61,706 bases of DNA, taken from NCBI GenBank assembly GCA_002269645.1, contig NIVC01004076.1, forward strand, positions 1 to 61,706, read 5' to 3'. Under the pieces are notes generated by a model. It worked only from the letters and a program-made list of their open reading frames with translations. It was not told the DNA's origin and searched no databases. Made by a program: the position numbers and the translations under genes. This stretch comes from Macrostomum lignano. Lineage: Eukaryota. Below, piece by piece: positions 361 to 46,077 of this stretch (the first letter of the stretch is position 1; each line of letters opens with the position of its first letter).

Positions 361-1502
361 AAATTACAGGAAGCAATTAGAATACTCAATGAGTCGCTGA
401 AAGGCGAATGCGTACTAAAGGTGAGAGACTGCTAGGCCGTAACCCCAAACCCAACAGCCAGCCAAAAGATAGCGACCGGGGGTGGCCTAAGCCCTTACCG
501 GCCCAACGCTAGCAACCGAGAAGCTCCCCAGCTAAGAGCCCCGCTTGTAGAAACCAGAAGCCGAACCAAAGGTCCACCAGCGCGGTGCTACTCTGGGCCC
601 TCGAGGGAGACAAGAGGGCTGTCTCCGGAGACTGGGGACTGGTCGCATACCCTGTTAGGTCAGAGGGTGATAACTGTTTCTTAGAGCCGTAACCAGATGT
701 GCCTCATAGGCACAAATTCCCTTCCGGGCAAAGCCGGTACCCAAAACGGCCAAGCCAAGGCCACGGATGGGTTGCCGCCGTCAATCCAGCAGCCCTAGAG
801 CTGCCTTGAACACATGCTGTTCTGGAGTTCCATTTCTATATAATTTAGGGGTTTTTCTTGTTGTCTACTCGTAATTGTACATGCATTTTATCTCTTTAAT
901 GTACATGAGCCATCCGCTCTCTCTTCTGCTTAACCCACCCCACGTTAAATCTCGTAAAAAGGCACGATATTTTGATTAAGTGCATTTTAGGTGTTTTTTA
1001 TGCCTGCGCGAGATCGCAGGATTGGTGAAGGCAAAACCTTTTAAACATCCGATTTTTCTTTGTTTATTTTTTGTTCTGAAAATATTATTCGATTGAACAT
1101 GTGGGATGGGAACGCCTGGGTCAACTTGTGGGTCAGCTTAGAGAGAGTTCTCCCGCCATTCCTGCACGAATGGAGAGGAGTGGGAACGAGATAAAAGAGG
1201 AAAGTAGATTAAAAAGAAAAGAGCTGAGAAGAGGCACCAGCCTTGAGCAGACGGTATAGAGGATTCAAGCACCGGATACAGAGACTTTGCGGTCGGATGT
1301 TTGGCGACCCCTGATTAAAATAGACAAACGCTGCACACGCAATTCGCACAATTCGTTTTAAGCTTTCTCTGCTGCATTCGCGAGATATATGATATTCACA
1401 CGTTTTCTAGCTCCAAGCTTCCAAAATTTCCCCTCTGGACTTCCGAATTTCAAATTCAATTTAAATCAATTCAATTTTCTCCTTTGCGACATAAATTTTC
1501 AG

Positions 1503-2248
1503 TGCCAACCTCGGGTTCAAAACAACATGGAACGCCGGTGACCTACACGCCCCCTGTGGACAATGCCTGCTATCGGTTCGAAGCGCGTGGCGCCAAAGGA
1601 GGTTCCGGAAGCGCAGCTGGTGGAAATGGGGCTATAAAAATTGCCCACTTTATCCTGAACAGCTCTCAGACGTTGACTATTGTTGTCGGAAAACCCGGAA
1701 ACAATGGCGATGGCGGCGGCGGAGGCGGCACTTTCGTCTACACGAGTGGCGGCAGTCCCGTCCTGCTGCTGGCGGCTGGAGGAGGAGGCGGTGGAGGAGG
1801 CGTCAGTTCGGCTACAGGCAGCCCTGGAATCAGTTCGACCGGCGGCTGCTCCGGATTGGCCAATCAAAACGCGGGAAGCAACCCGTCCGAAATTAACTGT
1901 GGCGCCGGCGGTGCAGGATGGCAATCACCTGGGACTCCACCTGGGGGCAGCCATTGTGGCTCAGTTGGAAGTAACTTGGCAGGAGGTGATGGCGGATCAG
2001 GCGGCGGCTTTGGTGGCTACGGTGGTGGAGGCGGTGGAGGCCGATCAATGGGACCAAATAAGGCCGGAGGCGGCGGTGGCGGTGGCTACTGCGGCGGCTC
2101 CGGCGGGGCGCAAGACAATCCGGGTGGCGGCGGCTCAAGCTATGCAGCTGCTTCAGCCAAGCAAGTTTCAGGAACGGATGGAGACAACACCGAAGCTGAT
2201 GGCAAGGTAGAAATATCTATTGTGAATGGCTCCTTCTGCACACCGTGA
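1503..2248 (+). CDS. Terminal exon encoding an ALK/LTK-type glycine-rich domain (Gly_rich_2-like)
   Basis: Motifs YRFEARGAKGG, GGNGA...F.L....TLTIVVGKPG, GGGGGTFV, LLLAAGGGGG, GGGGGYCGG, GGGGSSY and DGKVEI match the ALK/LTK Gly-rich domain layout. There is no in-frame ATG near the start. A pyrimidine tract plus TTTTCAG acceptor ends at 1502 (phase 1), so the upstream exon is unidentified. Confidence 0.75.
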
Positions 2249-4490
2249 TCACCCGATAGAAACGCTACCGTGTCAAGGATCACAAAACACATAAAATTCT
2301 AGTAACTTTGTGGCGACTCTTGTAAACTTTAACGACTCAAATGACTGTAATTCGACGTAGAGGCGAATGTGAATTCAGAAACGTGTCAAGTGAGTTGTAG
2401 CTTCTTAAGAGTCGCAAAAGAGTCGTCCATGAGTCAATTTTAACAATAAACGCTGTTGGAATGATAAAGGCGCATATTTGAGGGAAAGAGTCAATTTTTG
2501 AAGGCAATGTTTCGTCGATAGACAGAGACGAGTTGGTTTTTACATTTGATTTTAATTGATACGTTCGTGCCAATCACGTGTATTGCAATCGTCGAGAATG
2601 CCATGTTTGCCAGAATGGGAGAAAGGCAGTTGAACTTCCTGGCAGTTTCCTGCCACATATTTGCTTGTAGTTTATTCGTTTTGCACACGGTTTCGCCTTA
2701 GAGTAAAAATACCGTATTGGTTGTAGACGCGGCTACATCTATCTGTGAACTTTTTTCTCGCTTTTATGGACAATGTTTGTGGACACGCATTTGATTCCAG
2801 CTAATCCACTCACACTTACAGGCAACTCTGTTGCTTTCAAAGCAAATTTACACACTGTAGGCAGTCAGTCAGTCTCGTGGCTCTTTCCCACTATGCTTTG
2901 CTAATGGAATGCAATTAAGAAAAAGCTGCATCGTAAAAGTCTTAGTGATAGTTTTTTCCCAGAGACAGACCTGATAGACAGAGGCTCTGCGTTTGATGGA
3001 CTCGCTCGCTCAACAAGTCAACATGCCACAGGGGTTATAAAGTTATCGATGAGGACAGCCTTTATTGACCGTTTGTCAAAGCTGAAAAGGCATCCTGGAC
3101 GAGTCGCTGTGCTCGCAACACGGTCTGAAGCTTCTGAAAATTTAAAATAAATTTAGATAATTCTCCGGTGTTATACATACGCAGGTTGAAGTTCATGTAA
3201 AATTGAGTGGCGCTACTGTCCACAGCTGACTCGTGCGATCATGACTTAATGCAAATTAAAATAACGAGTTGACTTTCTAATCTGTCGGCGCCTTTTGCTC
3301 TTCCTAACTCCTTTCCTGTCTTGCTAAATATAAAAGATGTGTCGCAAATCGGACATGGACTGACGTCACTAATACTTGCGGATTAAGAAGTGTAAACTAT
3401 ACCTTATGCTCGTGTACCAACCGGCCGAGTTCTACTTCGGCAGGGTGTTCCTCGTTCTGGCGCTGACGTCGGGCACGGTGGCCATCTGCGTGCTGCTGGC
3501 CTGGAACAACAGGACCGCTCGGCGAATGCACTCCGACACGGCCGGTGTTAGGGTTTCTGCTCTCCGGAGTTAAGGATCTCCGGCCCGGCGATCCAACCAA
3601 AAAAATTACGCGATTTTACAATCGCCCTCACGGATATCAGGAACCATGACATAAGATAAGGTTACAGATCGCCGCCATGCTAGACTCTCCGGAGTATTAT
3701 TATCTTAGAAAATTGGAAGATAAGAGATAAATTATTCATTTCTTTCTAGAATGTGATTCTAATTAGAAAGCCCAGCTCGTGAGCAGCCTATAGCTTGCGC
3801 AACTTTTTCGATGAGTTCATCCATCTAGTGCATCGTACATTTGCATGCCCTGTGAGGGCTAAATTTAGAGTTGGCCAGACTTGTGCATCATTTTTCGTCT
3901 CTGTGCATTTGTCGAGGGATTTGATTGTCATATATAAGCAGTGAAATAAAACATATTGTGAGTAATTGTCTGTTTGCGGTTATCTTTACTTTCTACTTGT
4001 CAAATGGCTACTTTGAATCAAATATTCTTTTATGTACTGAACAATGACTGCGCACAAATTCCTGTTGACTTGAACTCGAGAGAGAAAAGCAATTTGAAGA
4101 GGCGCATCAGGTAAAAGAGCAGAAATTTTAGCATTCACGATGGAGCATTGTTTTACATGGTGAAAAATAAAGATGGCAGTAAGCGCATGCGGCCCGAAGA
4201 CAGACGCAAGGTGCTGTTTACCGAGCAAGAAGTGCAAGTAAAGGTTTTGAGCCTTCATTCTCAAGGGAGCCATGTTGGCTTGAACAGCACCGTGAGTCTT
4301 TTCACGGCAAGGTACTATGCCGATATACCTGTAACACCGATTGCCAAAGCTGTGGTTCAGGCGTGTGCGAGGTGCGAAATGGTCAACAAGAAGTTTTCTT
4401 CAGCGCAGAAGGAGCTGCATCCCATTGAAGTTTCCAGGAATGCAGAGCGCCTCTTCGGCTTTTTGTGCATGGACTGCATCACAATGGAGG

Positions 4491-4616
4491 GCTCATCGGA
4501 AGTCAGAGTTTAAGGCAATGGCCTAATTGACACTCGCGGCTACCGCTAGTGTCGCTAGTGTAGCTACCGCCGCTCGTGTCAAAGGCCATTGCCTTAAACT
4601 CTGACTTCCGATGAGC
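4491..4616. repeat. Perfect 34-bp inverted repeat (fold-back hairpin) at the left Crypton end
   Basis: 4491-4524 GCTCATCGGAAGTCAGAGTTTAAGGCAATGGCCT is the exact reverse complement of 4583-4616. Inner pairing continues (TTGACAC/GTGTCAA, GCGGC/GCCGC). Confidence 0.95.
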
Positions 4617-4858
4617 ATCATTGCTTAAAATTTCAAAACTCTTACGTAATCTACGCACTTTATGTACACTATCGTGAATTCTTATCAGTCGATGCTGCTA
4701 AGGGGGTTTGAGATAAGGTTGCCTCCACCTCGCCTATGTCTCACCTTTAAGTCGCGCACCTGAAGTCAGCCACCCCTTACTCTGCACCCACCCCTAAATT
4801 AATTAAAAATATAAATATTTGCGTGTCTAGAGGTCAAATCTCAGATAGAGAAAAGCGG

Positions 4859-7056
4859 ATGGCTGCAGAGATGGAGGCACCGCTTATTAATTGGAAGTAT
4901 TTGCCCTGCAGTGAGCTGGGCAACGTGACCAAGGACGAATTAAATTTTGTTTCGGAGGCTTCTTACAATGACAGAAGGGACGACGAGTTCGCTAGATTCT
5001 CGAATTCATTCAAAAGGAGCCCGAGCCCGATGAGCATCTGCCGCTCCTGCAGGAAGGCGGCGTAGATATCAGCGCCATGGACATCGCCGAGATTGACAGC
5101 CTACCAGCAGACAGCAGGAAGCAGATGGACAGCGGTTCAAGACATTCCTCACAGAGGAAAATCTTCAGCGCAATTTACAAACCATTCCGAATTCGGTGCT
5201 CAACCAATACATTCGCTACTTCTACTTTAAACTGAAGAAGATTGACGGCGAACCCTACTCGCCCGCATCGCTGGTGTGCATCAGGGCTGGACTGCAGCGC
5301 TATTTGCGGATGATCGAGAAGCTAACCGTTGACATCATCAATGGAGAAGACTTTTCTTCTGCAAATAGCATGCTGCGTGTGAAGGTTCGAGACTTTCACC
5401 AGAGTGGTGGGAGGACGCAGCAGTTTGAGCCAATCGAGGAGGGGGACATGAGGAGCTGATGATCTACTTCCAAGGCAGCACAGCTGAAGTTGAGCAGGAC
5501 AAATTCTTATTCTACATCATATACAGCTTTGGCGAGCGAGGCCAGGAGCACCTCAAGTTCTTGAAGGATAGAAGCTCACTTCAATTGCACGTCGACTCTG
5601 ATGGAAAGCCGTACTACTGTCTGCCTCCGTTGCCCTCGAAAAATAAGTCAGCAGATCCAGAGAAGGCCAAGAAGCAGCCCGACAACAAGCAGGCCAGAAT
5701 TTACGACGTGGAAAAGGTGGAGAAATACCTCAAGCTGCTTCCAGTTACAACGAAGGACAACAATCTGTTTCCTCGTCCTTTGGCCAGCCGCAACGATGGA
5801 GGCCCTGTTTTCTCCTCGAAGCAGAACCGTGGAGAGAATTATCTGAGTGGCTTCATGAGAAACTTGAGTACGAAGGCGGGACTTGCGAAGACCTACCAAG
5901 GACGACTTAAGTAGAAGGACGGGAAACCTCGTTTCTTAGAAAATTTTTGAAGGCACTTTTTCCCGAAAAAATACACTGCGGAGATAGGAAATTTTCATTT
6001 TTTCAGCACAAAAATTGCTATAACTTTTGATAGGAGGCAGATCCAGTGTTGATCTTTTGATATGTTGTGCCTTTTTTATTGCTCTATCGATATTTATAAA
6101 GCTTTCCGTTCAGAAAATTAGGATTGTATGTTAATTTTTTATTCTACGTATATTTTCATGTGTCTTGTGCTTGAAATACATTAGAATGCCACGGCTCGGC
6201 TCTTTGGTTTTATGAGTCTATTTTATCCTTCTTACCTGACTGTATAGCAAATAGTCGTAACATAGATGATAAAATAGATTCATAAAACCAAATATTAGAG
6301 CTGTGTCATGCATTTTTGTGATTTTTAGATACAGGAAATATCCGTAGAATAAAAAATTAACATAGAATCCTAATTTTCTGAACGGAAAGCTTTATAAATA
6401 TCGATAGAGCAATAAAAAAGGCACAACATATCAAAAGATCAACACTGGATCTGCCTCCCATCAAAAGTTATAGCAATTTTTGTGCTGAAAAAATGAAAAT
6501 TTCCTATCTCCGCAGTGTATATTTTTTCGGGAAAAAGTGCCTTCAAAAATTTTCTAAGAAACGAGGTTTCCCGTCCTTCTACTTAAGTCGTCCTTGAGAC
6601 CTACACGAATCATTGCATTCGGTAAGACTGATAAATTAATAATAGTAACTTTAATTATGTTATGATACATGTTATGTTACCAATTACTCATGAATCCAAC
6701 TATATAAATTTGCACTCTAAAACAGGGTCACGCGAATATGCGATCTCGAGGCGGCAGGGCACAGAATGAGCGATATAATGAGCATTACTGGACAGCTGAG
6801 CGAGCGAGCGACTAGGAGGTACCTAGCCAAGCGTCGCGACCGGTCGCTTCAAAAGACGAGTGAGTCTGTTCAAGTGGCATTGAATCGTCATGATCTAGAG
6901 CAAGAAGCTGGGCCACCCGAACATGCTGATGCTGTTGAGATCGTCGGTGAGACTGTAGTATCGACGGAGGTTAGTGTTAGCACTGAAGCTGCCTATTCTG
7001 TTGATACGAAGTTTGCCTTCAACAATTGCACCTTTCACGGATGTTCCTTTAATTAG
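4859..7056 (+). pseudogene. Crypton tyrosine recombinase (DUF3504 / ZMYM-QRICH1-KCTD1-related), frameshifted and MITE-interrupted
   Basis: Contains LNQYIRYFY..KKIDGEPYSPASL...AGLQRYL, FGERGQE (catalytic R) and SKNK. After MITE removal the sequence reads KTY-TNHCIR. Intron 6622-6725 then gives RVTRICDLEAAG...IMSITGQ.S..ATRRY (Y present) and a C-terminal FNNCTFHGCSFN. Frameshifts occur near 5040-5100 and at 5455. Confidence 0.85.
5897..6596. mobile_element. 700-bp non-autonomous long-TIR element (MITE), possibly P-superfamily
   Basis: TIRs of about 250 bp start CAAGGACGACTTAAG and have few mismatches. The 8-bp TSD AGACCTAC lies at 5889-5896 and 6597-6604. CANRG termini with 8-bp TSD fit the P superfamily, but the family call is tentative. 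Confidence 0.9.
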
Positions 7057-8779
7057 GCATGCAATCTTTACTTCTACAGGAATCAGCAAATTGTACTCGT
7101 AGAATTACTGAAAGAATAAGAACGACAGTCTAGTATAATATTTTTTATTTAATGACTTTTAGTACTTTGCTCGACCAGTATGATGTTCATCACCGACAAA
7201 AATTTACATGATATACTGACACTGTGCTTTTTGTACTGTCGATTTTGCAATTCCTGTGCCAGTTTAATTATTTACATCTTAAAATAAACGTTTTGAATTG
7301 ACTGATGCAAGATACGCTTTGCAAGATGCTGGATAAAAACTGGCTTGAATTAATTGGTTGCATTGAAATTGGAATTCTAGGCAATGGCCTGCCATCGCCA
7401 TGGGTCATTGCCATGAGGAGAAATTTTGGGCAATGCCGACTACCACACCAAACGGTTCGAAATATATCCTGACTGTATGCTGCAAGTTTACAAAATTTTC
7501 CATTTTTCGGGCGTTGCCGAACATCAAAGCGCTGACTATCGCAGCCGAGTTAAAAAGCATCTTCGCGCTTTTTGGCTGGCCATTTGTCATTCTCAGCGAT
7601 CAAGTACGCGAGTTTTGCAACTCTGTCTTGGACGCCCTGCTGCAGTCCGGAGGAACGAAAAGAAGAGTGACCAGTGTTTACTACCCACAGGTAACCTTAA
7701 CAGTAATGTTTTATGCTTCTGATATTATGTAGCAGTGGTGCATCATTTTTAAGTACGAGTAAATAACTAATTTTCTCCAGACAAACGGTCAGACTGAGCG
7801 CCTCAACCAAACGTGCATTAATCTACTGAGAAAGCGGTGTGATTCTGAGGAACCAACTAACTGGGATTCCATGCTGAATGATGTTCAACTCGCATACAAC
7901 AGCCGCCGACATTTGGTGACAGGCTTCTCGCCGTGCAGGTAAAATATGAAAGTAATAAAGTTTATAGAGAATCAAGTATATTTTATAAAGCATATTTCTA
8001 TACTGTAGCAGACAATGTTAGTTCATATGCCTCCATTCATCTTTAGAGCCGCCTTTGGCTTTGAGCCATTGCTAGGCGATCATGCCGCAGCACTGGCTTC
8101 GGTTCCGGAGCCGATGGAAATCAACAGGCGATTGCTTGCCAACAAGGACAAGAAGCGAGCCGCAGCGCGAAAACTAATTGCGCGTAGAATCAAGATCGCT
8201 CAAGAAAAGATGCGACCAAGGACCTTGGATGCGACAGCGTCACTTGGTTTCGGCTGCTGGAGCTCAAGAGCTAAAGCGAGGAGACAGAGTTCGGCTTCGA
8301 AATCTGCGGAGGAATGATCGAAAGGGTGGCAAGATGCGATACACCTGGAGTCAGCAGGTCTACATCGCGACGAGGTGCCTCGGTCGCAACGTATATCGAT
8401 TAGGAGGTCTCACTAGACGTGTCAATGGCAGGCATCTCAAGAAGTGCTTTCTACAAGTACAATGGTTGAGCAAATCTCCAGTTTTTTATTAGAATCGCAT
8501 GCGGGATTCTGAACTGACAGCACTCGTACGAGTATTTATCAAAGGTTTCCAGCTCGTATTTTTGCCCTGGTATGGTGCATCACAGCTGCAAAATATACTG
8601 GCTACAGTGAAACGTTAAACTACGATCTTACGGAATGTAAAATGTCTTGAAATGGAAAAAATGACTGACATTGTTAGCGATTTTTACTACCTTTTATGCT
8701 TCGATGAAAATTGTTAAACGGTTAAGAGAAGGAAACTACAACAACACTCGTTGCACGATTACGATTTCGGACTTTATAA

Positions 8780-9081
8780 AAATGGGGAGATCGGTAACCG
8801 GAGATCCTAAACCAAACCTTAGTTTTTGCACTCGTGACGGAGATCGGCAAACGGTGTAGAATCTCCGAGGGGATAACAGAATCTGGTTTTGCATCTCCGG
8901 ATAGGGAGACCTGACCATGCCCCGGAGATCCCACAACGGTTACGGATCTCCGATTGTGGAGATCCCTAACCGTTTGTATTCTCCGAAGGAGATCCTAAAC
9001 CCTTTAAGATCTCCGGTCGGAGATCCCAGCCCGTTTGCAGTCCAAAACTGACCAGAGCCCCGGAGTTTCTAAACCGTAATA
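8780..9081. repeat. Subterminal array of GGAGATC(C)/GATCTCC motifs at the Ginger right end
   Basis: About ten copies in both orientations (e.g. 8800, 8840, 8924, 8945, 8958, 8988, 9009, 9019). One GGATCTCC copy is at the left end near 3573. Confidence 0.75.
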
Positions 9082-12000
9082 CCGGCTCTGAGCAGCAGCA
9101 GCGGAGCAACCGAGAGCGACAGAGGCCGCTTGTTCGGATCAGCCTCATGCTGGTCTTCATCAACGTCTTCTTTCTGATCACGTCTTTGCCGTGGAGCATC
9201 GGCGCTCTGCTCGAAGTCCAAATTCTAAATAAGCTCAAAGTGAACTTCTTCATATTGATGATGCGGCACTTCAACTCGCTGCTGTACGCGAACAACGCTC
9301 TGTCCTGGGTGTGACGTACTTGATGGGACGGAACTTTCGAGAGGCGTTTTGCCGAGTGTGGCTGTCCCTGTGCTGCTGCTGCTGCGCCTCCTGCCGTCGT
9401 CGCTCCAATTTTGCGTAGAGGGTAAAAATATAGCGCTGAACTAAAATTTCATGTTGCTGAATTAGTCACAATGAGCGTAGATGGCTTATAAATATCAAAG
9501 AAGACAACATTTTTAGTAAAAAAATAATATTTTACTGCATTGTCGATTCAGCTCTGTCCAAATATTGGTCATAGCGTTTCCAGCTGATATCGGCAAAAGA
9601 GTGTGTTTGAGCACGTCAGGAGTCGGGATACGACATCTTAGTGAGCTAGCTACTAGTGACCTAGCCTGAAGGTTAAGCTTCAGGCTTAGGTATAGAAATC
9701 AAGGTTTTGCATAGGGTTTAGGTTTTAGGGTCAAAGCAGTAAAATTGTCTCGGTAAGGTCAGACAGGTTCACAGATAATAAATTACTAGATATTTCACTC
9801 TGCATTGAGTTAAGCCATTTTTTGTGTTATAGTCTATGGCTCAAAAAGTGTCTACTCTTTGGATGAGCGTCAGTGTGCGCATAGCAAGAAAAATTGCTAG
9901 TTGCTCCAAAAAGAATTTTGACGCAAGGCACTGCGTGCCTACGGGTGCACGCATCCATGTTCGTTCACGCTACTAACCAAAGAGTAGTTGCAAAAATCTA
10001 AACAAGAGTGAACTATCTAGGGTTATTGTATCTGTGGACAGGTTTAGTTGTTTAGTTGCATTTAGAATATATGCACCTTTTTTCATTTAAATTACGTCCA
10101 ATCCTTTAGTACTGGTTTTAAGCTGTCATTATGGAATCTCTCAAGATTGGTTGCCTAGGTTTTACGAGTTTAGAGAGCCAGATAGCAAGAGATTTAAACT
10201 TGTAATACATAGCGTCTAATTGACACAATCTGAAGTTTGACAACCTCGTATAAGAGTCATCTAATCGAGCAAGTGCATTTTTGAACTGTTGACTGCCTTT
10301 ATGCTTATCTTTCATCGATACAAAGTGTTAAGGTCAGATTCTCCATAAGTGCACAGAAGCTACAGCAGCCAAGAAAGTTTGGCGCTGACAGCGAAGAAAA
10401 CCTGCAATAAATTCTTCATGACACGATTAGACCTTTTATTTGAGTAGGCCATCCTTGTGTCAAGGCCAAAGTATAGACCAATTTGAGTTCAGTTCCTCCA
10501 TGCCTTTAGCTCGGATATAGTATTAAGTCGGAAGAACGAAACCGCGGATAGCAAATATCGTCCATAAATGTGATTATCAGCTTATCAGCTGCCAAAATTG
10601 TCACCTTAACTCAGCTAACGTACATGTAGAACCAGAGGATTCCGCCAGCAAGACATTATTTGTAGCCGATCTGGAACTTAATTGGTCTAAAAGTATAGCT
10701 ATAACCACAATGGATCAAGAGGGCCAGAGAACTTTAATTGCAATAATAGCGAGGGTACCATAGATGGAAATTGCGGAGGTGACAGAGAAGAACAAAAGAG
10801 TCATTAAACACAGTAGATAGTACGTTTGGATGCCTTCGATACCGAGCTGATATGAGCGAGGACAAGAAAAATTTATGAAACAACTTTGCAAGCACCGTAT
10901 CGAAACAATTGTTGTGTGCTGCACTTCGGTATACTACAAGGGCACTCCGTCCTATGCGTGTACTCTTACTGGATTTTCTTTGTTTATTTACTCTAATTGT
11001 TTTGGCGTCTCGGCTCTGGCTGGTTGGCGGCGGGCCCCGGGCTGAGACTTTGTGACTTCCCCGTCAGGTGTCGCCAGCTGATTGGTTGAGCCAGGCGTTT
11101 TTGTCTCTCCCGCTGTTACTGTAACTTTTTTGCTGCTCTCTGATTGGCTAGGGGTGATGGGCGCTGGGTGTCCCTCCCCCCGGGCAGGGTGGTGGGCTGG
11201 AAGGTGTGAGCCGTTTTTAGATCCGTACATGCTGTTGAAACCCGCGGATTTTGAACCCGTGGAATTCTAATCCTCGGAACTATTTTTGCATGTATTCTAG
11301 AATCTGAAGTCATACTAAAAAAAACTTGTTAATAGTTAGGATAGAGGTACGTAAATATAAAATGGTGTAAATTCGTGCAAAATTAAAATTTTTGGCAAGC
11401 ATTGATCTCGTTGGCTAGGGTGCTGCGCAGAATGTCAGGCAATGTCTGTCTAAAACATGTACGAGCTATTGGCAAACTCTGGCCTCTGCCTCTGCCTGTA
11501 CGTCCCTCGGATCCTTGAAAACTTCTATCCTCTCTAGGGAATTCGTCCCTGGGGACACTCGCCGGGGACCCCGGGGAATTTTCACAAAAACCTACCCGGG
11601 GAATTCGTATCGGGGACCCCGCGGGCAAATAGGAAAGTGAAGTAGTCACGGAAATTGATGTAGCAACATTGTTAAAGCTGTGTGCAATTAATTTTAAATG
11701 ATAATGCATATACATAGTAGTGTGTACTCGTAGATTAAAAATTGCCTTAATATATAGCCGTGAGTTAACAACTTCGGGTTGGCAATCTGCAGTACATATA
11801 ACAGCATGACAGTCTATAAAGACAATAGCTATATTTTACTCAGACTACGCTCCATACTGTTTTTTACTCATCATTCAATATTCTTCTCATTGTATGACTT
11901 TTTGTAGTTTTTTTACTGCTTCTAGCAAATCTAATAAAATTCTAACAATGTATATGTTGTTTAACCTGTGTGAATAGTATTTTTTTCGTTTTTTGCTTGC

Positions 12001-12560: not shown

Positions 12561-13613
12561 ATGAACAGCACCGACAATACTACTCATGTAGCAAATAAGC
12601 CATGGTTCCACGACCCCACCTGGAACTGGTTCATCTGGAACGTCTTCGTCTGGCTCTTTCCGCTGCTCTGTCTGGTCGGAGCGGTTGCGAACGCCGTCTC
12701 CTTCTACGTGATCGTGTCCAACAGGAAGTCGTTTCCCTACGTCACCAGGCAGTACCTCACCATCATCACTGCCAGTGACTTTCTCATTCTCACGTGCAAA
12801 GTGAGCACTCACTACTTTGGCTACATGGCATTCTACGTGAAGACGAACAAGTGGACCTGGTTCACTTTTCCAAGAGCCTGGGGACTCGCTTGGTGCATTG
12901 TGTACGACTTCTTTACATACTATGCAGTCATGGGTGTTCAGTTTTTTCAACTGGGCCTCATGGCGGATCGGCTGATTGCAGTAGCGGCTCCGATGAAGGC
13001 CAAGGTGATTCTGACTCACCGCAGAAGCTGGCTGATGCTGAGCCTCATCACTGCAATGTCACTGCTATTGCCGATCCTGTTCGTCGCGAATAGGAGGTGG
13101 AACGACGACACAAACTCGTGCGTTCTACGCAGTAAAGACTATTTAGTGAACGTGTACCAGCCGGCCGAGTTCTACTTCGGCAGGGTGTTCCTCGTTCTGG
13201 CGCTGACGTCGGGCACGGTGGCCATCTGCGTGCTGCTGGCCTGGAACAACAGGACCGCTCGGCGAATGCACTCCGACTCGGCCGGCTCTGAGCAGCAGCA
13301 GCGAAGCAACCGAGAGCGACAGAGGTCGCTTGTTCGGATCAGCCTCATGCTGGTCTTCATCAACGTCTTCTTTCTGATCACGTCTCTGCCGTGGAGTGTA
13401 AGCGCCCTGCTAGAGCGCGAGATCATCGAGCGCATGGGAGAGAAGTTCAACTCTATCATATTGTTTCACTTCAACTCGCTGCTGTACGCGAACAACGCTC
13501 TGTCCTGGGTGACGTACTTGATGGGACGGAACTTTCGAGAGGCGTTTCGCCGAGTGTGGCTGTCCCTGTGCTTCTGCTGCTGCGCTGCCTTCCGTCGTCG
13601 AGTGGACACTTAG
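12561..13613 (+). CDS. Class A (rhodopsin-like) 7TM GPCR, peptide-receptor-like, intronless (paralogue 2, 350 aa)
   Basis: Seven hydrophobic segments, N-terminal N-glycosylation sequons, TM1 GxxAN, TM2 ASDFL, DRL in place of DRY, Cys near TM3 and in ECL2, TM6 LPW, and a Cys-rich C-tail. Confidence 0.92.
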   Translation: MNSTDNTTHVANKPWFHDPTWNWFIWNVFVWLFPLLCLVGAVANAVSFYVIVSNRKSFPYVTRQYLTIITASDFLILTCKVSTHYFGYMAFYVKTNKWTWFTFPRAWGLAWCIVYDFFTYYAVMGVQFFQLGLMADRLIAVAAPMKAKVILTHRRSWLMLSLITAMSLLLPILFVANRRWNDDTNSCVLRSKDYLVNVYQPAEFYFGRVFLVLALTSGTVAICVLLAWNNRTARRMHSDSAGSEQQQRSNRERQRSLVRISLMLVFINVFFLITSLPWSVSALLEREIIERMGEKFNSIILFHFNSLLYANNALSWVTYLMGRNFREAFRRVWLSLCFCCCAAFRRRVDT

Positions 13614-14855: not shown

Positions 14856-16172
14856 TTTTTGTGTGACTCGTAAACCTAAGCTGCAGCTTTTAGAGAAAAA
14901 CCAACACTAATTAGCACCTAATACACTTTTCCCTGTAAATTATTTGATGCTATATTCTAATGATATTCATCGACTCTATCAACTGATTTATGCAACATTT
15001 ATCCAGGACTTACAGCCATTACTATACAAAAAGTCAGTATCCATGCCCTTTTGCGAGCGCGTAAAAACCCTTTAACAATGAGAGTTTTATTCAGTCCAAA
15101 TGCATAAATTTTGCTCCAAGTGAGCCGGTTAAAAGAAAAATCTGCGATTACTTTTTTGGAAAAGACTTTCAGAAACTTTTCCTGATTAAGACAAAAATCT
15201 GGTTCCGTCAGAATTGAACGGCAAACAGTCCGCTTGTCAGCATTGTCCGCCCAACTCCGGATAAACCGGCTGAATCGTTCTTAGCAAAGAGTTTTTTCTC
15301 TCCGGCTTGTATCGATTTATACGTTTGTTTTACTAGGCCATGCTTCCTGTGGAGTTCAACTATTGAGCAACTCAAGTTTCTGTTGACGCACGATTAACTG
15401 ACTCTTGCTGACACGTCAATTAAAACTTATTTGCACCAATGAGGAAGTAATTTCTAAAGACAAAGAGTTACCTTTAAAAATGACGATTTGTCGAATGCTG
15501 AGATAATTTCCGTAGCATTGTCGCAGCCTGACTTACGACTGATTCCCGTCGCCAAGCTAAACAGCTTTTTGTGTGCCGCACTGCCACCTACCCAAGCTTG
15601 TCTTCCAAGCGACCCCTATCATCTTCGTCCATCTTGTTGATTGAAGTTCAAGACTTGCACAGCAGCCGTGGCGACTTGTAGCTACCTGTGAGATCAAGGT
15701 GGGTCGATGATTTTTGCAGCCATCTAAAGGCCATGCATAGTTTGGAACGCGTTTTTGCGCGAGGCTCTGTCTGCAGTTTATTTCGTTCTTTCTGATCGTT
15801 TCTGTCTGATTCCTGTTTAGTTCCTTCGTGGCCTTTGAGCCTCTTTTTGTTTGGTTGTGCGTTTGAAAGACTTAATGACGGGTATCTGGCCCCGCTGATC
15901 GAATTCTTGTGCTAGTTTGATGCATTTCGTTTTCTTATTGCGAAGTAGACGCAATTGCGAATGAAGTCTCATTGCTAAGGGACTTCCACATGGACATACT
16001 TGCTAGAGAATGAAGAGTTACACAACTAAAAAAACAATTAAAAACCGAAATTGCTACTTTAAGTAAAATATTAAAATATCTGAGCATTAATCTTTAGACA
16101 ATAAAAGTGGAATCAGTAAAGTCTCACCTTTTCCAACTTATCAAATGCGCTCATATTCAGCAAAGCAAGCGA

Positions 16173-16968
16173 TTCTCATTCTCACGTGCAAGGTGAGCAC
16201 TCACTACTTTGGCTACATGGCATTCTACGTGAAGACGAACAAGTGGACCTGGTTCACTAATTCGAGAGGTTGGGGACTCGCTTGGTGCCTTGTGTACGAC
16301 TTCTTCACCTACTATGGGCTGGTAGGATCCCAGTTCTTTCAACTGGGTCTCACGGTAGATCGGCTGATTGCGGTAGCGGCTCCGATGAAGGCCAAGGTGA
16401 TTCTGACACATCGGAGAAGCTGGGTAATGCTGAGCATGTTCATGTTCATGTTCGTCGCGAATCGGACGTGGAACGACGCCACTAACAACTGTGGATTACG
16501 AAGTGTCAACTATCTAGTGAACGTGTACCAGCCGGCCGAGTTCTACTTCGGCAGGGTGTTCCTCGTTCTGGCGCTGACGTCGGGCACGGTGGCCATCTGC
16601 GTGCTGCTGGCCTGGAACAACAGGACCGCTCGGCGAATGCACTCCGACTCGGCCGGCTCTGAGCAGCAGCAGCGAAGCAACCGAGAGCGACAGAGGTCGC
16701 TTGTTCGGATCAGCCTCATGCTGGTCTTCATCAACGTCTTCTTTCTGATCACGTCTCTGCCGTGGAGCATCGGCGCTCTACTAGAAGACCAGCTGGTTAC
16801 TGAACTTGGAGCAACCCTTTCATATTCAACTCGCTGCTGTACGCGAACAATGCTCTGTCCTGGGTGACCTACTTGATGGGACGGAACTTCCGAGAGGCTT
16901 TTCGCCGAGTTTGGCTGTCCCTGTGCTGCTGCTGCTGCGCCGCCTTCCGTCGTCGAGTGGACACTTAG
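16173..16968 (+). pseudogene. GPCR paralogue 3, 5'-truncated with TM4 and TM7 deletions
   Basis: Starts inside TM2. TM4 is collapsed into ATGTTC repeats near 16435. A deletion and frameshift occur near 16812-16825. Otherwise it is nearly identical to paralogues 2 and 4. Confidence 0.92.
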
Positions 16969-17408
16969 GGCAGCAGCTCGACGGCGAGCGTTCGTTAGGA
17001 CTCAGACCGAGCATGATTGCAGGGTCTTTAAGCTGCTTGACTTGTGGACTGACAGAATTTTTAATACGTTTTCGAGAATCAAAGCAATCTTTATTTCTTT
17101 TTTGACTTCAGCTTTAATGACAAATTTTCTGTAAATCACTATTTATTACTCTTTACTGGCTATTTTCTGTTCTTTTTTCTTCTGGCTGTGCTCAGTTCGT
17201 TAGCGCTTTTGCCGCCCGAAATGGAAAGTTAATCATGCTAATTGGCTGTCAGCTGCTGAGTTTGTCTGCTTGTGAAAGCCGCTTTGAGGAGCGACAAATC
17301 AAGCTGAGATGCAATTAACCTGGCTGTTATCTTTAACCTGGCTGGATGAAACTGTAAACTTCTTGCAGTGCAAAAGCAGCGCGATGTAAGAGTGTTGTGT
17401 CTGGTAAC

Positions 17409-17667: not shown

Positions 17668-18460
17668 TGTCCCCCTCCAAATGGGAACATTGGACAAGCA
17701 TAACAAAACAGTTTAAATATGTCAGTAAACAGTAAACGCACGCCAACTAGTGTCAATCTTAGCTAGTTCATGCCATAGCGAGTTTATGGCGCAAATCTGT
17801 TAGGTTGCTGCCTAATGCGTGAGCTTCGTCTCAGCGTAGACGTTGGATGCTGTCCATCGTCATCCGGGGTCGTTGCCGGTGTAGCATCACCCTCTTCCTC
17901 CTCGCCATCGTCGATGTCAGCACCATGGTATGGAGCGATTTGGTTGGTGCTAGCAAACTGTAGGCGGCCATTCGCCAAAACCCAGGCTGTGTTGCGTCCC
18001 GCGGTCATCAGGAATTTCGCGGGCTGCCCAACTGCATCGGATGGTTTGTACAGCACAGACTCGCCTTGGTCAAACGCTGAAACCACGGGAACCCGCAGTT
18101 TTCGTCCAAAAGTTGCGGTGATGCATCAGTACCTTCTGCAGAAAAGGGATGAACGGCAGACGGGTGATGCGCTCAGTCCAGGAGCGCAGTGCAGCCTTCA
18201 CGGTTTGAACCGCTCGTTCCGCTGCTCCGTTCGCTTGAGGATAGTATGGAGGGGATTCTAGTTTTGTCACGCCATTAGCTTTCAGCCAGGTGCCAACAGG
18301 ATCGCCTGTGAATTCTGGAGCGTTGTCTGACACCACAGTTTCGGATACGCCAAACCGAGTGAACACAGTGCGCAAAGAAGCGATGACGTTTTCGCCCGAC
18401 CGACTGGGACAGGGGAATGCTTCAATCCACCCAGAGAAGGCGTCCACTATGCACTTCAAA
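17409..18460 (-). mobile_element. 5'-truncated Gypsy (Ty3) LTR retrotransposon: integrase, PPT and 3' LTR
   Basis: Integrase core VDAFSGWIEAF...VVSDNAPEF...YYPQANGAAERAVQT (D,D35E), with a frameshifted C-terminus at 17784-18086. The polypurine tract GGAGGGGGACA (17668-17678) directly abuts the LTR. Confidence 0.85.
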
Positions 18461-24745: not shown

Positions 24746-25822
24746 ATGAACGAAACAAACTCTAGCAATCCTCAGGAGCCCTGGTTCCACGACCCCAACT
24801 GGAACTGGTTCATCTGGAACGTCTTCGTCTGGCTTTTTCCGCTGCTCTGTCTGGTCGGAGCGGTCGCGAACGCCGTCTCCTTCTACGTGATCGTGTCCAA
24901 CAGGAAGTCGTTTCCCTACGTCACCAGGCAGTACCTCACCATCATCACTGCCAGTGACTTTCTCATTCTCACCTGCAAGGTGAGCACTCACTACTTTGGC
25001 TACATGGCATTCTACGTGAAGACGAACAAGTGGACCTGGTTCACTAATCCGAGAGGTTGGGGAATCGCTTGGTGCATTGTGTACGACTTCTTTACATACT
25101 ATGGGCTGGTAGGATCTCAGTTTTTTCAACTGGGTCTCACGGTAGATCGGCTGATTGCGGTAGCGGCTCCGATGAAGGCCAAGGTGATTCTGACACATCG
25201 GAGAAGCTGGGTAATGCTGAGCCTCATCACTGCAATGGCACTGCTACTGCCGATCATGTTCGTCGCGAATAGAACGTGGAACGACGCCACTAACAACTGT
25301 GGATTACGAAGTGTCAACTATCTAGTGAACGTGTACCAGCCGGCCGAGTTCTACTTTGGCAGGGTGTTCCTCGTTCTGGCGCTGACGTCGGGCACGGTGG
25401 TCATCTGCGTGCTGCTGGCCTGGAACAACAGGACCGCTCGGCGAATGCACTCCGACACGGCCGGCTCTGAGCAGCAGCAGCGGAGCAACCGAGAGCGACA
25501 GAGGTCGCTTGTTCGGATCAGCCTCATGCTGGTCTTCATCAACGTCTTCTTTCTGATCACGTCTCTGCCGTGGAGCATCGGCGCTCTACTAGAAGACCAG
25601 CTGGTTACTGAACTTGGAGTCAACCCTTTCATATTGATGATGCGGCACTTCAACTCGCTGCTGTACGCGAACAACGCTCTGTCCTGGGTGACGTACTTGA
25701 TGGGACGGAACTTCCGAGAGGCGTTTCGCCGAGTGTGGCTGTCCCTGTGCTGCTGCTGCTGCGCCTCCTGCCGTCGTCGAGTGGACGCTTCGGGCAGCAG
25801 CTCGACGGCGAGCACTCGATAG
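24746..25822 (+). CDS. Class A GPCR, intronless (paralogue 4, 358 aa)
   Basis: Intact ORF with the same 7TM motifs as paralogue 2 and a CCCCC tail. Confidence 0.92.
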   Translation: MNETNSSNPQEPWFHDPNWNWFIWNVFVWLFPLLCLVGAVANAVSFYVIVSNRKSFPYVTRQYLTIITASDFLILTCKVSTHYFGYMAFYVKTNKWTWFTNPRGWGIAWCIVYDFFTYYGLVGSQFFQLGLTVDRLIAVAAPMKAKVILTHRRSWVMLSLITAMALLLPIMFVANRTWNDATNNCGLRSVNYLVNVYQPAEFYFGRVFLVLALTSGTVVICVLLAWNNRTARRMHSDTAGSEQQQRSNRERQRSLVRISLMLVFINVFFLITSLPWSIGALLEDQLVTELGVNPFILMMRHFNSLLYANNALSWVTYLMGRNFREAFRRVWLSLCCCCCASCRRRVDASGSSSTASTR

Positions 25823-36533: not shown

Positions 36534-36665
36534 GACTGAGGTGATGAGGCTTCGCACATGCAAAAAGAGGGGCATAGCAGAGATGCTTGAGCATAGGTTA
36601 TTGATAGACTTGAAAATCAAGTCACCTACTGTACACTGCAGACTAATTTAAGGGCTCCATCAGTA

Positions 36666-45500: not shown

Positions 45501-46077
45501 ATCTCACTCATCTCAACCTGAATCTCACTCATCTCAACCTGAATCTCACTCATCTCAACCCGAATCTCACTAACCCCACCCCGCCCAATAAATAAGCAAG
45601 CCAAAACGCAGCTGCCAATCTCACCAGCGAGTCGTGCGCATACACCCTGGCCAGCACGGCATCGCAGAAGCCGGACAGCACCTTAGCCGTGTCCGGCAGA
45701 GACTCATTCGTGCCCAGGTGTACATCCTGCGGACTGAGGAACACCGGCTGACCGCCGAGCAGGAAGAAGCCGGTCTCAGTGCTCACCCGAGTGCGGGTGC
45801 TGCGCTTCTCAAAGATCATGCCAAGAGAGTGGCCCTCTAGCGGTCGGTAGCTCAGAAGCCTGTCTTGTGCGTGTCGCGCCTTCAGATCCTTGGCCGTCCA
45901 CAGCAGCTGGGCGATTTCGGACTCTGAGTAGTCGCGCAGAGTGAGAAAATGCCGGCCTTTGAGATTGCTCCACTTGTCGGTTGAGGCGGCCGTTGATGAA
46001 GCGGCGCGGGATGCGATGCGAGGAGACTGGACAACGGCCAGGCGACCGACTTTGATGAGCAATTGCAGTGGCGACAT
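42523..46077 (-). CDS. OTC: Ornithine carbamoyltransferase, mitochondrial; exons 46077-45625, 44865-44665, 43895-43683, 42738-42523
   Basis: Motifs [45 protein letters not shown] and NRKW. All junctions are phase 0 GT-AG; about 360 aa. Confidence 0.96.
42808..43536. repeat. 48-bp minisatellite in OTC intron 3
   Basis: Unit GATAATTACTGCACTCCTGACTGATCTGAGTGCCGCTAGATAAGGTGA, about 15 copies. Confidence 0.95.
43942..44450. repeat. 22-23-bp minisatellite in OTC intron 2
   Basis: Unit GGAACAGGTATTGAAGGCACAG(G). Confidence 0.95.
44920..45572. repeat. 21-bp minisatellite in OTC intron 1
   Basis: Unit AACCTGAATCTCACTAAGCCC and variants. Confidence 0.95.

What the first reader, a model, noticed from the sequence alone, without database searches (positions are those of the whole stretch)
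3411..9403. Four-level Russian-doll insertion that reconstructs base by base
A GPCR pseudogene is split at a CCGG TSD by a Ginger element (3546-9081). Its integrase is split at CAATG by a Crypton (4487-7430), whose recombinase is split at an AGACCTAC TSD by a 700-bp MITE (5897-6596). Removing each layer restores the host reading frame (ITM|PTT, KTY|TNHCIR, DTAG|SEQ). The nest combines two rare transposon classes, a Gypsy-integrase DNA transposon and a tyrosine-recombinase transposon, with an unambiguous nesting order.
Basis: seen in the sequence. Interest (0 to 1): 0.8.

Follow-up and report, generated by a model that had tools for sequence, protein, structure and literature searches.

The report
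Three transposons nested in a pseudogene
A dead receptor-gene fragment in a flatworm-like genome holds a Ginger1 transposon, which holds a Crypton transposon, which holds a small hairpin transposon; every junction checks out to the base, but all three belong to known kinds, so this is a tidy textbook case rather than a discovery.

Summary
All three junction pairs sit at the stated coordinates, and removing each layer restores its host.

- **MITE, 5897-6596.** It has an 8-bp AGACCTAC target-site duplication (TSD). Excision restores the conserved recombinase motif KxYTNHCIR.
- **Crypton, 4487-7430.** It is flanked by CAATG. Excision restores the integrase without a gap against relatives.
- **Ginger element, 3546-9081.** It has a CCGG TSD. 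Three uninterrupted GPCR paralogs in the same window carry a single CCGG at exactly that site.

The classifications hold. The outer element matches published Ginger1 transposases best and has the Ginger1 hallmark CCGG TSD and a TGTTA 5' end. The middle element encodes a Cre-like tyrosine recombinase closest to published animal CryptonA sequences. The inner element is a non-coding 700-bp foldback MITE, consistent with hAT but unproven.

Corrections:
- The host is only a 3' gene fragment. Homology starts at 3341, and the fragment carries its own frameshifts.
- All three transposons are mutationally dead.
- Nesting gives topology, not necessarily the order of events at this locus.

Nested transposons of known superfamilies are routine. 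The one mildly new lead is that CAATG is the core of a 10-bp motif repeated only in the Crypton's ends. That hints at a defined crossover site, which the 2011 survey did not detect in animal Cryptons. It rests on a single copy.

The parts
3341..3545 (+). Host, left part: 3' fragment of a rhodopsin-type GPCR pseudogene (about paralog residues 173-240). Nothing upstream of 3341 is homologous to the paralogs.
   Evidence: blastn and tblastn against the paralogs at 25262-25464 and elsewhere, 87-91% nt identity. The paralogs hit Pfam 7tm_1 at 4e-14 to 4e-10, above the gathering threshold.
3542..3545 (.). CCGG, left copy of the Ginger1 target-site duplication
   Evidence: The paralogs have a single CCGG here.
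3546..4486 (+). Ginger1-type element, left part. 5' terminus TGTTAGGGTTT. Transposase ATG at 4004. In-frame TAA at 4112-4114, aligned to Glu in relatives. Contains the YPYY-like region, the H2C2 finger and the first catalytic Asp (MDCITM).
4482..4486 (.). CAATG, left copy of the 5-bp repeat flanking the Crypton (inferred crossover core)
   Evidence: The frame is restored only if one copy is removed.
4487..5896 (+). CryptonA-like element, left part. 5' palindrome at 4491-4524 / 4583-4616 carries GGCAATGGCC at 4514-4523 and 4584-4593. ORF ATG at 4859. Three frameshifts near 5000-5010, 5125-5130 and 5450-5460. The recombinase is read up to ...AGLAKTY.
5889..5896 (.). AGACCTAC, left copy of the MITE target-site duplication
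5897..6596 (.). 700-bp foldback MITE. Arms are about 330 nt (98-99% complementary over the outer 270 nt) and the termini are CAAGG...CCTTG. No ORF of 40 aa or more lies within it.
6597..6604 (.). AGACCTAC, right copy of the MITE target-site duplication
6605..7430 (+). CryptonA-like element, right part. TNHCIR (His-x-x-Arg). Phase-2 GT-AG intron at 6622-6725. Tyr in ...ATRRYL. Stop at 7054-7056. 3' inverted motif pair GGCAATGGCC (7380-7389) / GGTCATTGCC (7403-7412).
7431..7435 (.). CAATG, right copy of the 5-bp repeat flanking the Crypton
7436..9081 (+). Ginger1-type element, right part. Second Asp (LSDQVREF) and Glu (TNGQTERLNQ). GT-AG introns at 7691-7780 and 7939-8046. Frameshift at about 8215-8235. 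GPY/F-like C-terminal module. Stop at 8490-8492. Subterminal GGAGATC repeats at 8786-9025. 3' terminus ...CGTAATA.
9082..9085 (.). CCGG, right copy of the Ginger1 target-site duplication
9086..9418 (+). Host, right part: TM6-TM7 and tail of the GPCR pseudogene. An extra GT within 9305-9316 shifts the frame relative to the paralogs.
25461..25464 (+). Paralogous empty site: single CCGG in the intact GPCR gene at 24746-25822. The same is seen at 16653-16656 and 13282-13285.

Best explanation
This is a fossil stack of three successive transposon insertions in a dead copy of a tandemly duplicated rhodopsin-type GPCR gene. The animal genome is most likely a flatworm related to Macrostomum.

1. **Ginger1 layer.** A Ginger1-type cut-and-paste DNA transposon, whose transposase is a Gypsy-integrase-like DDE enzyme, inserted at a CCGG. 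Staggered cleavage and gap repair duplicated the CCGG. The mechanism is inferred from the family. The duplication itself is shown.
2. **Crypton layer.** A 2.2-kb CryptonA-type element encoding only a Cre-like tyrosine recombinase integrated between the first and second catalytic Asp codons of the Ginger1 transposase. The likely route is conservative recombination between the joined ends of a circular copy (...TTTTGGG-CAATG-GAGGGC...) and a CAATG in the target, which leaves CAATG on both sides without true duplication. The flanking CAATG is shown. The circle and the crossover are inferred from the Goodwin / Kojima-Jurka model.
3. **MITE layer.** A 700-bp non-coding foldback MITE, mobilised in trans by an unidentified transposase, inserted into the His-x-x-Arg box of the recombinase gene and made an 8-bp duplication. 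The 8-bp TSD and CAAGG termini fit hAT.

Nothing here is functional any more:
- The host is 5'-truncated and frameshifted.
- The Ginger1 ORF has a nonsense codon and a frameshift in addition to the Crypton insertion.
- The Crypton ORF has three frameshifts in addition to the MITE insertion.
For: - **Junctions and excision:**
- **Empty-site paralogs:** a single CCGG in each.
- **Gap-free homologue alignments:** across the Crypton site and across the MITE site.
- **Ginger1 criteria from the literature:** a 4-bp TSD that is CCGG in 75% of cases, and TGTNR ends (PMC2836005).
- **Ginger1 sequence matches:** the window integrase scores 134 bits (34-35% identity over about 280 aa) against published Ginger1-5_HM and Ginger1-6_HM. 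It scores 68-80 bits against mdg1-lineage Gypsy integrases. Pfam rve is at threshold.
- **Crypton recombinase:** the R, H-x-x-R and Y columns are conserved in the family. Pfam Phage_integrase hits 4 of 9 members and QRICH1 hits 8 of 9. Best matches are published CryptonA recombinases (CryA2_SP, E 5.5e-20), with none to CryptonS, DIRS1 or Cre.
- **Fold:** an AlphaFold model of the M. lignano relative P0010 matches Cre (E 1.5e-9, TM 0.60).
- **Decay:** the frame path of the Crypton ORF is 1>3>2>1>intron>3, and the TAA at 4112-4114 aligns to Glu in relatives.
- **Organism:** best transposon-protein hits are Macrostomum lignano entries at 57-73% identity.
Against: - Only one copy of each element is available. 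No second copy of any layer exists in the window, and no same-family copy was found in the collections I could reach.
- The Ginger terminal inverted repeat is poor. Nine of the first 11 nt match, the 3' end reads TATTA rather than TGTNR, and a local alignment of the ends is no better than shuffles.
- The MITE superfamily rests on TSD length and five terminal bases only.
- The circular intermediate and the crossover at CAATG are inferred, not observed.
- Read-level support for the assembly could not be checked.
Confidence: 0.9

Rival explanations
1. The chronology differs from the topology. The Crypton, with or without the MITE, entered a Ginger copy elsewhere, and the composite of about 5.5 kb was later mobilised in trans into the GPCR fragment. 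The inner layers would then be older at this locus than the outer insertion event.
For: Published Ginger1 elements reach 7 kb, so a 5.5-kb composite is within range. The CCGG TSD is still perfect and the 5' terminus is intact. Non-autonomous mobilisation is common for DNA transposons (established knowledge).
Against: There is no second copy of the composite in the window. The 3' terminus and the inverted repeat are degraded, which does not suggest a recently mobile unit. The simplest reading is sequential insertion in place.
Confidence: 0.12
2. Assembly artefact. One or more layers are chimeric joins or foldback artefacts of long-read assembly rather than real insertions.
For: The MITE is a near-perfect 700-bp palindrome and the Crypton has a 126-bp palindrome. 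Structures like these can arise from or provoke assembly errors. No reads were available to check.
Against: Each layer has exact flanking repeats of the length expected for its class, and its removal restores a conserved protein without a gap. Random mis-joins would not do this three times. The MITE arms carry mismatches and an asymmetric loop.
Confidence: 0.03
3. The outer and middle elements are fragments of retroelements rather than DNA transposons: a Gypsy-type LTR retrotransposon integrase region and a DIRS/Ngaro-type recombinase region.
For: Ginger1 transposases are up to 40% identical to Gypsy integrases. DIRS elements also encode tyrosine recombinases.
Against: The boundaries are fixed by an empty site and by frame restoration. 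They enclose only 2,587 bp (Ginger) and 2,236 bp (Crypton), each with a single ORF and no RT, RNase H or LTR. The TSD is the Ginger1-specific CCGG. The integrase scores far higher against Ginger1 than against the Gypsy references. The recombinase matches CryptonA and not DIRS1. GingerRoot is excluded by its 6-bp TSD.
Confidence: 0.03
4. The 2.2-kb recombinase element was moved by a DDE transposase that makes 5-bp duplications, as in the Mariner-Crypton fusion MarCry, so CAATG would be a true TSD.
For: A 5-bp flanking direct repeat looks like a TSD. MarCry-1_FO shows that Cryptons can be mobilised by a DDE enzyme.
Against: The element's extreme ends are not inverted repeats: GAGGGCTCATCGG... 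versus the reverse complement CCCAAAATTTCTCC.... No DDE ORF is present. CAATG is the core of a motif repeated only in the element's own ends, which fits a recombinase site better than a random target.
Confidence: 0.05

Closest known systems
Ginger1 DNA transposons (Bao, Kapitonov & Jurka 2010, Mob DNA 1:3; e.g. Ginger1-5_HM and Ginger1-6_HM of Hydra, Ginger1-1_BF of amphioxus)
   Same: - A 4-bp CCGG target-site duplication.
- A TGTNR 5' end (TGTTA).
- A single intron-containing ORF for a Gypsy-integrase-like transposase with a YPYY-like region, H2C2, DDE and a GPY/F-like C-terminal module.
- Size of 2.6 kb without the insert.
- No RT or LTR.
- Best sequence matches are to published Ginger1 transposases.
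   Different: - The terminal inverted repeat is only about 11 nt and imperfect, against 40-270 bp in the published families.
- The 3' end reads TATTA.
- There is no C-terminal OTU or Ulp1 protease domain. Among the published transposases this is true only of Ginger1-1_BF.
- The host phylum (a flatworm-like genome) is not among the species of the 2010 survey.
- This copy is dead.
CryptonA elements of animals (Kojima & Jurka 2011, Mob DNA 2:12; e.g. CryptonA-2_SP, CryptonA-1_OL, CryptonA-1_SK)
   Same: - About 2.2 kb with a single tyrosine-recombinase ORF.
- No C-terminal DNA-binding domain and no RT.
- Box II signature YTNHC(I/L)R...AG...IM..(S/T)G(H/Q).SE...Y.
- An N-terminal QRICH1-type domain shared with the Crypton-derived genes (KCTD1, ATF7IP, ZMYM, QRICH1).
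   Different: - The published animal Cryptons have 'n.d.' terminal repeats. This copy is flanked by CAATG.
- It carries a 10-bp motif (GGCAATGGCC) in inverted pairs near both ends, including a 34-nt-arm palindrome at the 5' end.
- It has a conserved phase-2 intron after NHCIR.
- It has a short conserved C-terminal tail, F-x-N-C-x-F-x-G-C-x-F.
CryptonS elements of oomycetes and diatoms (same paper)
   Same: Five-base terminal direct repeats with a related sequence: TATGG in most families and TAATG in CryptonS-2_PU, against CAATG here. Relatives of the window element carry TCTATGG or TTAATG motifs in their ends.
   Different: The recombinase shows no significant similarity to CryptonS proteins. 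The resemblance concerns the short repeat only and could be coincidence.
hAT-type MITEs / foldback elements
   Same: An 8-bp target-site duplication, termini CAAGG...CCTTG that fit the hAT YARNG consensus (own knowledge), no coding capacity, and a length of 700 bp.
   Different: The arms are about 330 nt, so the whole element is one hairpin, whereas typical hAT inverted repeats are 10-25 nt. The TSD only half fits the hAT nTnnnnAn preference. No autonomous partner was identified, and 8-bp TSDs also occur in P, Novosib and some Mutator elements.

Membership tests
Ginger1 | 4-bp target-site duplication, CCGG (75%) or CCGT/ACGG (24%) | tested here: met
   CCGG at 3542-3545 and 9082-9085. Three paralogs have a single CCGG at the homologous site. 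The criterion comes from PMC2836005.
Ginger1 | Termini 5'-TGTNR ... YNACA-3' | tested here: inconclusive
   The 5' end is TGTTA and fits. The 3' end reads ...TAATA, reverse complement TATTA, which is one transition away from the pattern. A single decayed copy cannot show whether this is a mutation.
Ginger1 | Terminal inverted repeats of about 40-270 bp | tested here: inconclusive
   Only 9 of the first 11 nt match. A local alignment of 350-nt ends scores 40 against a shuffle mean of 30.5 and a maximum of 47. Both ends carry inverted copies of a GGAGATC / CCGGAG motif: 7 of the 8 GGAGATC copies in the window lie in 8786-9025, and one GATCTCC lies at 3575. A family consensus is needed.
Ginger1 | Transposase homologous to Gypsy integrase, with YPYY, H2C2, DDE and GPY/F, and closer to Ginger1 than to other integrases | tested here: met
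   - blastp scores 134 bits to Ginger1-5_HM and Ginger1-6_HM and 97-123 bits to six other Ginger1 transposases, against 68-80 bits to 412, Mdg1 and GYPSY17.
- The alignment shows the Y..P..F..Y, H/H/C/C and D/D/E columns.
- Pfam rve scores 32.6 bits, exactly at the threshold.
- Caveat: only three Gypsy references from one lineage were compared. The GPY/F module was judged by eye (GDRVRLRN...W....Y.).
Ginger1 | No reverse transcriptase, no LTRs; cut-and-paste structure | tested here: met
   The 2,587 bp between empty-site-defined boundaries hold one ORF only. There are no long terminal direct repeats.
Crypton (CryptonA group) | Encodes a tyrosine recombinase with the R-H-R-Y tetrad | tested here: met
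   - GERGQEH (Arg), TNHCIR (His-x-x-Arg) and RRYL (Tyr) are present, and the first two lie in invariant or near-invariant columns.
- Pfam Phage_integrase hits 4 of 9 family members, best E 7.4e-5.
- The model of relative P0010 matches Cre-loxP structures at E 1.5e-9.
- The window copy itself is frameshifted.
Crypton (CryptonA group) | Recombinase groups with published CryptonA sequences rather than CryptonS, CryptonF or DIRS | tested here: met
   blastp gives CryA2_SP 74.7 bits (E 5.5e-20), CryA1_OL 60, CryA1_SP 53, CryA1_SK 48 and ATF7IP 67. CryptonS, DIRS1 and Cre are not significant. No tree was built, and CryptonI and CryptonF were not included.
Crypton (CryptonA group) | Small element (1.2-2.3 kb) with the recombinase as its only protein, and no RT | tested here: met
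   The element is 2,236 bp after removing the MITE and has one ORF with one intron. The size range is from PMC3212892 Additional file 1.
Crypton (CryptonA group) | Moves through an excised circle and site-specific recombination at a short shared sequence | not testable with these tools
   Only the product is visible: CAATG on both sides, no inverted repeat at the extreme ends, and CAATG as the core of the element's own repeated motif. Circle junctions need wet-lab or read-level data.
hAT-derived MITE | 8-bp target-site duplication | tested here: met
   AGACCTAC on both sides. Its removal restores KTY|TNHCIR.
hAT-derived MITE | Termini related to those of an autonomous hAT element in the same genome | not testable with these tools
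   There is no other copy in the window, and no eukaryotic repeat library or source genome was available. CAAGG fits YARNG only from memory of the consensus.
Rhodopsin-family GPCR (host) | 7tm_1 domain | tested here: met
   The intact paralogs score 53, 45 and 40 bits against a cut-off of 30.5. The host fragment is 87-94% identical to them at protein level but covers only about residues 173-334 and has frameshifts.

The most novel reading that the evidence does not exclude
The nest captures one animal (CryptonA-type) Crypton insertion at single-base resolution. It suggests that these elements do have a defined recombination site, which the 2011 survey could not detect ('n.d.'; 'neither direct nor inverted' repeats).

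- **The site.** The element is flanked by CAATG. CAATG is the core of a 10-bp motif (GGCAATGGCC) whose only four occurrences in 61.7 kb, allowing one mismatch, are inverted pairs in the element's two ends. Joining the ends would recreate 8 of the 10 motif bases (GGCAATGGAG).
- **Relatives.** Divergent relatives show the same layout with family-specific motifs. These are TTAATG(A/G)CC in L002, TCTATGG in the M. lignano locus L001 and in L004, and GGGCAG(C/T)AAT hairpins at both ends of L007.
- **Wider parallel.** The motifs recall the TATGG and TAATG terminal repeats of stramenopile CryptonS.

If real, a WATG-type crossover core with flanking recombinase-binding repeats would be a shared feature of distant Crypton groups.
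Probability: 0.35. Interest if true: 0.45.

Novelty: new member of a known kind. Interest (0 to 1): 0.28.

Why it matters
As a structure it matters little. Nested transposon insertions are common in repeat-rich animal genomes, and all three layers belong to described superfamilies.

- **Annotation value.** It gives exact, independently validated boundaries for a Ginger1 and a CryptonA family in a flatworm-like genome. It also shows Ginger1's CCGG target preference against a natural empty-site control.
- **One useful by-product.** Animal Crypton boundaries are notoriously hard to define. A copy whose edges are fixed by the reading frame of the gene it interrupted gives a concrete hypothesis for the crossover sequence (CAATG) and the binding motif. 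That hypothesis can be tested on other copies or in vitro.

Tried and rejected
- **Other copies in the window.** I searched for each layer and found only self-hits. The search did reveal the GPCR paralogs.
- **Same-family Crypton copies.** Protein search gave best hits at 71-72% identity on short Logan and JGI contigs. The single metagenome scan returned only two relatives at 34% identity. DNA similarity between families stops inside the coding region, so boundaries could not be transferred.
- **Organism identification.** An exact look-up of an intact GPCR paralog found nothing on record. A homology search with the same paralog found no hit at E <= 1e-3. The best transposon-protein hits point to Macrostomum relatives.
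- **Sequence search of the recombinase profile against PDB.** No hit at E <= 1. Fold comparison was needed instead.
- **Long Ginger terminal inverted repeat.** The alignment was not better than shuffles.
- **GingerRoot as an alternative class.** Rejected because of its 6-bp TSD and its lack of the YPYY, H2C2 and GPY motifs.
- **Ginger relative L008.** It shows a ...TAACA end followed by ACGG. Its 5' end is not clearly inside the contig, so it adds only anecdotal support.
- **Full integrase phylogeny.** The 71-kb published alignment was not used. Only a subset of references was compared.

Full report
**What is in the sequence**

The region was read directly and the six junctions were extracted.

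- **Innermost unit, 5897-6596.** It is exactly 700 bp. Its first and last 40 nt are perfect reverse complements (CAAGGACGACTTAAGTAG...), and it is flanked by AGACCTAC on both sides. Repeat analysis shows it is essentially one hairpin. The arms at 5897-5976 / 6517-6596 are 99% complementary and those at 5966-6155 / 6336-6525 are 98% complementary, with a looser centre. No ORF of 40 aa or more lies within it.
- **Middle unit, 4487-7430.** It is flanked by CAATG (4482-4486 and 7431-7435), and its extreme ends are not inverted repeats.
- **Outer unit, 3546-9081.** It begins TGTTAGGGTTT, ends ...CGTAATA, and is flanked by CCGG.

**Does excision restore the hosts?**

I looked for evidence independent of those frames.

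1. **Outer layer.** The window contains a tandem family of single-exon GPCR genes. Intact ORFs lie at 12561-13613, 24746-25822 and 28780-29895, and a damaged copy lies near 16.1-17.0 kb. Sequence left of the outer unit (3341-3545) and right of it (9086-9402) matches these paralogs at 85-92% identity. In each paralog the two halves abut. The alignment reads ACTCCGAC(A/T)CGG-CCGG-CTCTGAGCAG with a single CCGG. This is as good as an empty-site allele. It fixes the insertion to 3546-9081 plus a 4-bp duplication.
2. **Middle layer.** The reconstructed integrase aligns without a gap across the Crypton site, both to its closest database relative P0001 and to published Ginger1 transposases. An example is MDCITM|PTTTPNGSKYILT against VDLIGPLPETVNGNKYVLT.
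3. **Inner layer.** The reconstructed recombinase aligns without a gap across the MITE site to six homologues at the near-invariant motif LSKxYTNHCIR.

**Corrections to the description**

- The host is a fragment, not a whole pseudogene. Homology to the paralogs starts at 3341 (about residue 173 of 358), and nothing upstream matches.
- The host has a frame change near 3400 and an extra GT within 9305-9316. The paralogs pass Pfam 7tm_1.
- All three transposons are dead.
  - The Ginger ORF has TAA at 4112-4114 where relatives have Glu, and a frameshift at about 8215-8235.
  - The Crypton ORF runs through frames 1>3>2>1, then an intron, then frame 3, which means three frameshifts.

**What the outer element is**

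Pfam finds an rve integrase core at threshold, with weak H2C2. Bao et al. define Ginger1 by a 4-bp TSD that is CCGG in 75% of cases, by TGTNR termini, and by a Gypsy-integrase-like transposase with YPYY, H2C2, DDE and GPY/F motifs and no RT (PMC2836005). I copied reference sequences from that paper's Additional file 3.

- The window protein scores 134 bits against Ginger1-5_HM and Ginger1-6_HM.
- It scores 97-123 bits against six other Ginger1 transposases.
- It scores only 68-80 bits against three mdg1-lineage Gypsy integrases.
- The alignment shows the Y..P..F..Y, H-H-C-C and D-D-E columns.

GingerRoot is excluded by its 6-bp TSD. Without the Crypton, the element is 2,587 bp with one ORF and two GT-AG introns (7691-7780 and 7939-8046).

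The weak points are the inverted repeat and the 3' end. Only 9 of the first 11 nt of the two ends match, and the 3' end reads TATTA. A longer inverted repeat is not distinguishable from shuffles. However, a GGAGATC motif is concentrated in the last 300 bp (7 of the 8 copies in the window), with one inverted copy at the 5' end. I file the element as a decayed Ginger1 member.

**What the middle element is**

Homologues are mostly Macrostomum lignano proteins that UniProt labels 'Tyr recombinase domain-containing', at 45-58% identity. Two short environmental or Logan contigs reach 71-72% identity.

- The family conserves Arg (GERGQEH), His-x-x-Arg (NHCIR) and Tyr (RRYL).
- Pfam finds Phage_integrase in 4 of 9 members and the Crypton-derived QRICH1 domain in 8 of 9.
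- An AlphaFold model of the M. lignano member P0010 (mean pLDDT 69.6) matches Cre-loxP structures over both domains, with E 1.5e-9 and TM 0.60.
- Against sequences from Kojima & Jurka's Additional file 4, the window recombinase matches CryptonA elements (CryA2_SP, E 5.5e-20) and the Crypton-derived ATF7IP and KCTD1 domains. It does not match CryptonS, DIRS1 or Cre.

The element is 2,236 bp without the MITE, inside the published CryptonA range, and has no RT. A phase-2 intron directly after NHCIR (6622-6725) is shared with the relative on L002. I file the element as a CryptonA-type member.

**The inner element**

An 8-bp TSD and CAAGG termini fit hAT. Eight-base duplications are not exclusive to hAT, and no autonomous partner or second copy could be found. 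The superfamily remains tentative.

**How the nest arose**

The shown facts are the three nested intervals and their flanking repeats.

The mechanisms are inferred from family knowledge. Ginger1 and the MITE insert by DDE-type staggered cuts. The Crypton integrates by conservative tyrosine-recombinase exchange between a circular form and a target that shares a short core (Goodwin's model as summarised in PMC3212892).

The nesting proves that each inner sequence entered its outer sequence after that sequence existed. It does not prove that the events happened at this locus in that order. A Ginger already carrying its passengers could have been mobilised in trans. I rate that at about 0.12, and it is testable only with other copies.

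**A lead on Crypton ends**

Kojima & Jurka report 5-6-bp terminal direct repeats for fungal and stramenopile Cryptons. These are TATGG in most CryptonS families and TAATG in one. For all animal families they report 'n.d.' and state that no direct or inverted terminal repeats were found.

- Here the boundaries are fixed by the interrupted gene, and the flanks are CAATG.
- The 10-mer GGCAATGGCC, allowing one mismatch, occurs four times in the 61.7-kb window. All four copies lie in the Crypton's ends, as inverted pairs at 4514-4523 / 4584-4593 and 7380-7389 / 7403-7412.
- The first pair sits inside a perfect 34-nt-arm palindrome. Joining the element's ends would give GGGCAATGGAGG, which matches 8 of the 10 motif bases.
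- Divergent relatives show analogous subterminal hairpins or inverted pairs with their own motifs:
  - L002 has GGCCATTAAC / GTTAATGACC.
  - L001 and L004 have TCTATGG / CCATAGA.
  - L007 has GCGGGCAG(C/T)AAT hairpins at both ends.

This is suggestive of a recombinase-binding motif with a WATG-type crossover core. It rests on one bounded copy, and I could not obtain same-family copies to test it.

**Context and organism**

The rest of the window holds ordinary animal genes:
- a MAM33/p32 gene at 35.7-36.6 kb;
- ornithine/aspartate carbamoyltransferase exons at 43.6-46.1 kb;
- a Vps39-like CNH / clathrin-repeat gene at 50.5-58 kb.

There is another integrase relic at 18175-18450, and many minisatellites lie beyond 38 kb. 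The GPCR family has no detectable relative in the large protein database. The species could not be named beyond 'related to Macrostomum'.

**Verdict**

It describes known kinds of elements doing a known thing. I rate novelty as 'new member of a known kind' and interest at about 0.28. Most of that interest comes from the precisely bounded CryptonA insertion.

Noticed in passing
window 12561-13613, 16118-16995, 24746-25822, 28780-29895 (plus the fragment 3341-3545 / 9086-9418): A tandem array of single-exon rhodopsin-type GPCR genes. Three are intact, one is frameshifted and 5'-truncated, and one is the 3' fragment that hosts the nest. The family passes Pfam 7tm_1 but has no detectable relative in the 5.8-billion-protein database, so it looks lineage-specific.
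   Followed up: partly
window 4491-4616 and 7380-7412; L001 5617-5720; L002 8-123 and about 1912-1963; L007 18-127 and 1932-2037: CryptonA-like relatives share an architecture of subterminal hairpins or inverted pairs. Each carries a family-specific motif of about 10 nt with a (C/T)(A/T)ATG-like core. The window motif contains the flanking CAATG. The motifs resemble the published TATGG and TAATG terminal repeats of stramenopile CryptonS.
   Followed up: partly
window 6622-6725; L002 about 1312-1411: A phase-2 GT-AG intron directly after the NHCIR codons is shared by the window Crypton and a relative that is 67% identical at nucleotide level. It is absent from the M. lignano gene on L001 (6001-7350). 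Several database 'proteins' of the family (P0006, P0012, P0014) end at exactly this point.
   Followed up: partly
window 7015-7056; P0009, P0010, L002: The family has a conserved C-terminal tail, F-x-(N/D)-C-x-F-x-(G/S)-C-(T/S)-F, just before the stop. Published animal Cryptons are described as having no C-terminal domain.
   Followed up: no
window 18175-18450 (-): A second, unrelated integrase-core relic lies between GPCR paralogs (Pfam rve 6.5e-11; 29% identity to a Gypsy-integrase-like fish protein, P0005). Its boundaries were not examined.
   Followed up: no
window 8786-9042 and 3562-3583: The Ginger element has about seven direct subterminal copies of GGAGATC(C) spaced 14-85 bp apart at its 3' end but only one inverted copy at its 5' end. 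They may be transposase-binding repeats, and the asymmetry is unexplained.
   Followed up: partly
window 35679-36620 (-), 43647-46077 (-), 50543-58059 (-): Ordinary host genes: a MAM33/p32 gene, ornithine/aspartate carbamoyltransferase exons, and a Vps39-like gene with CNH and clathrin/VPS repeats. Their introns are packed with minisatellite arrays (for example 51.4-53.4 kb and 58.2-59.9 kb) that read through as long repetitive ORFs.
   Followed up: partly
window 1484-2248 (+): A glycine-rich 254-aa ORF with no Pfam match lies just upstream of the truncated GPCR fragment. Whether it relates to the 5' truncation at 3341 is unknown.
   Followed up: no
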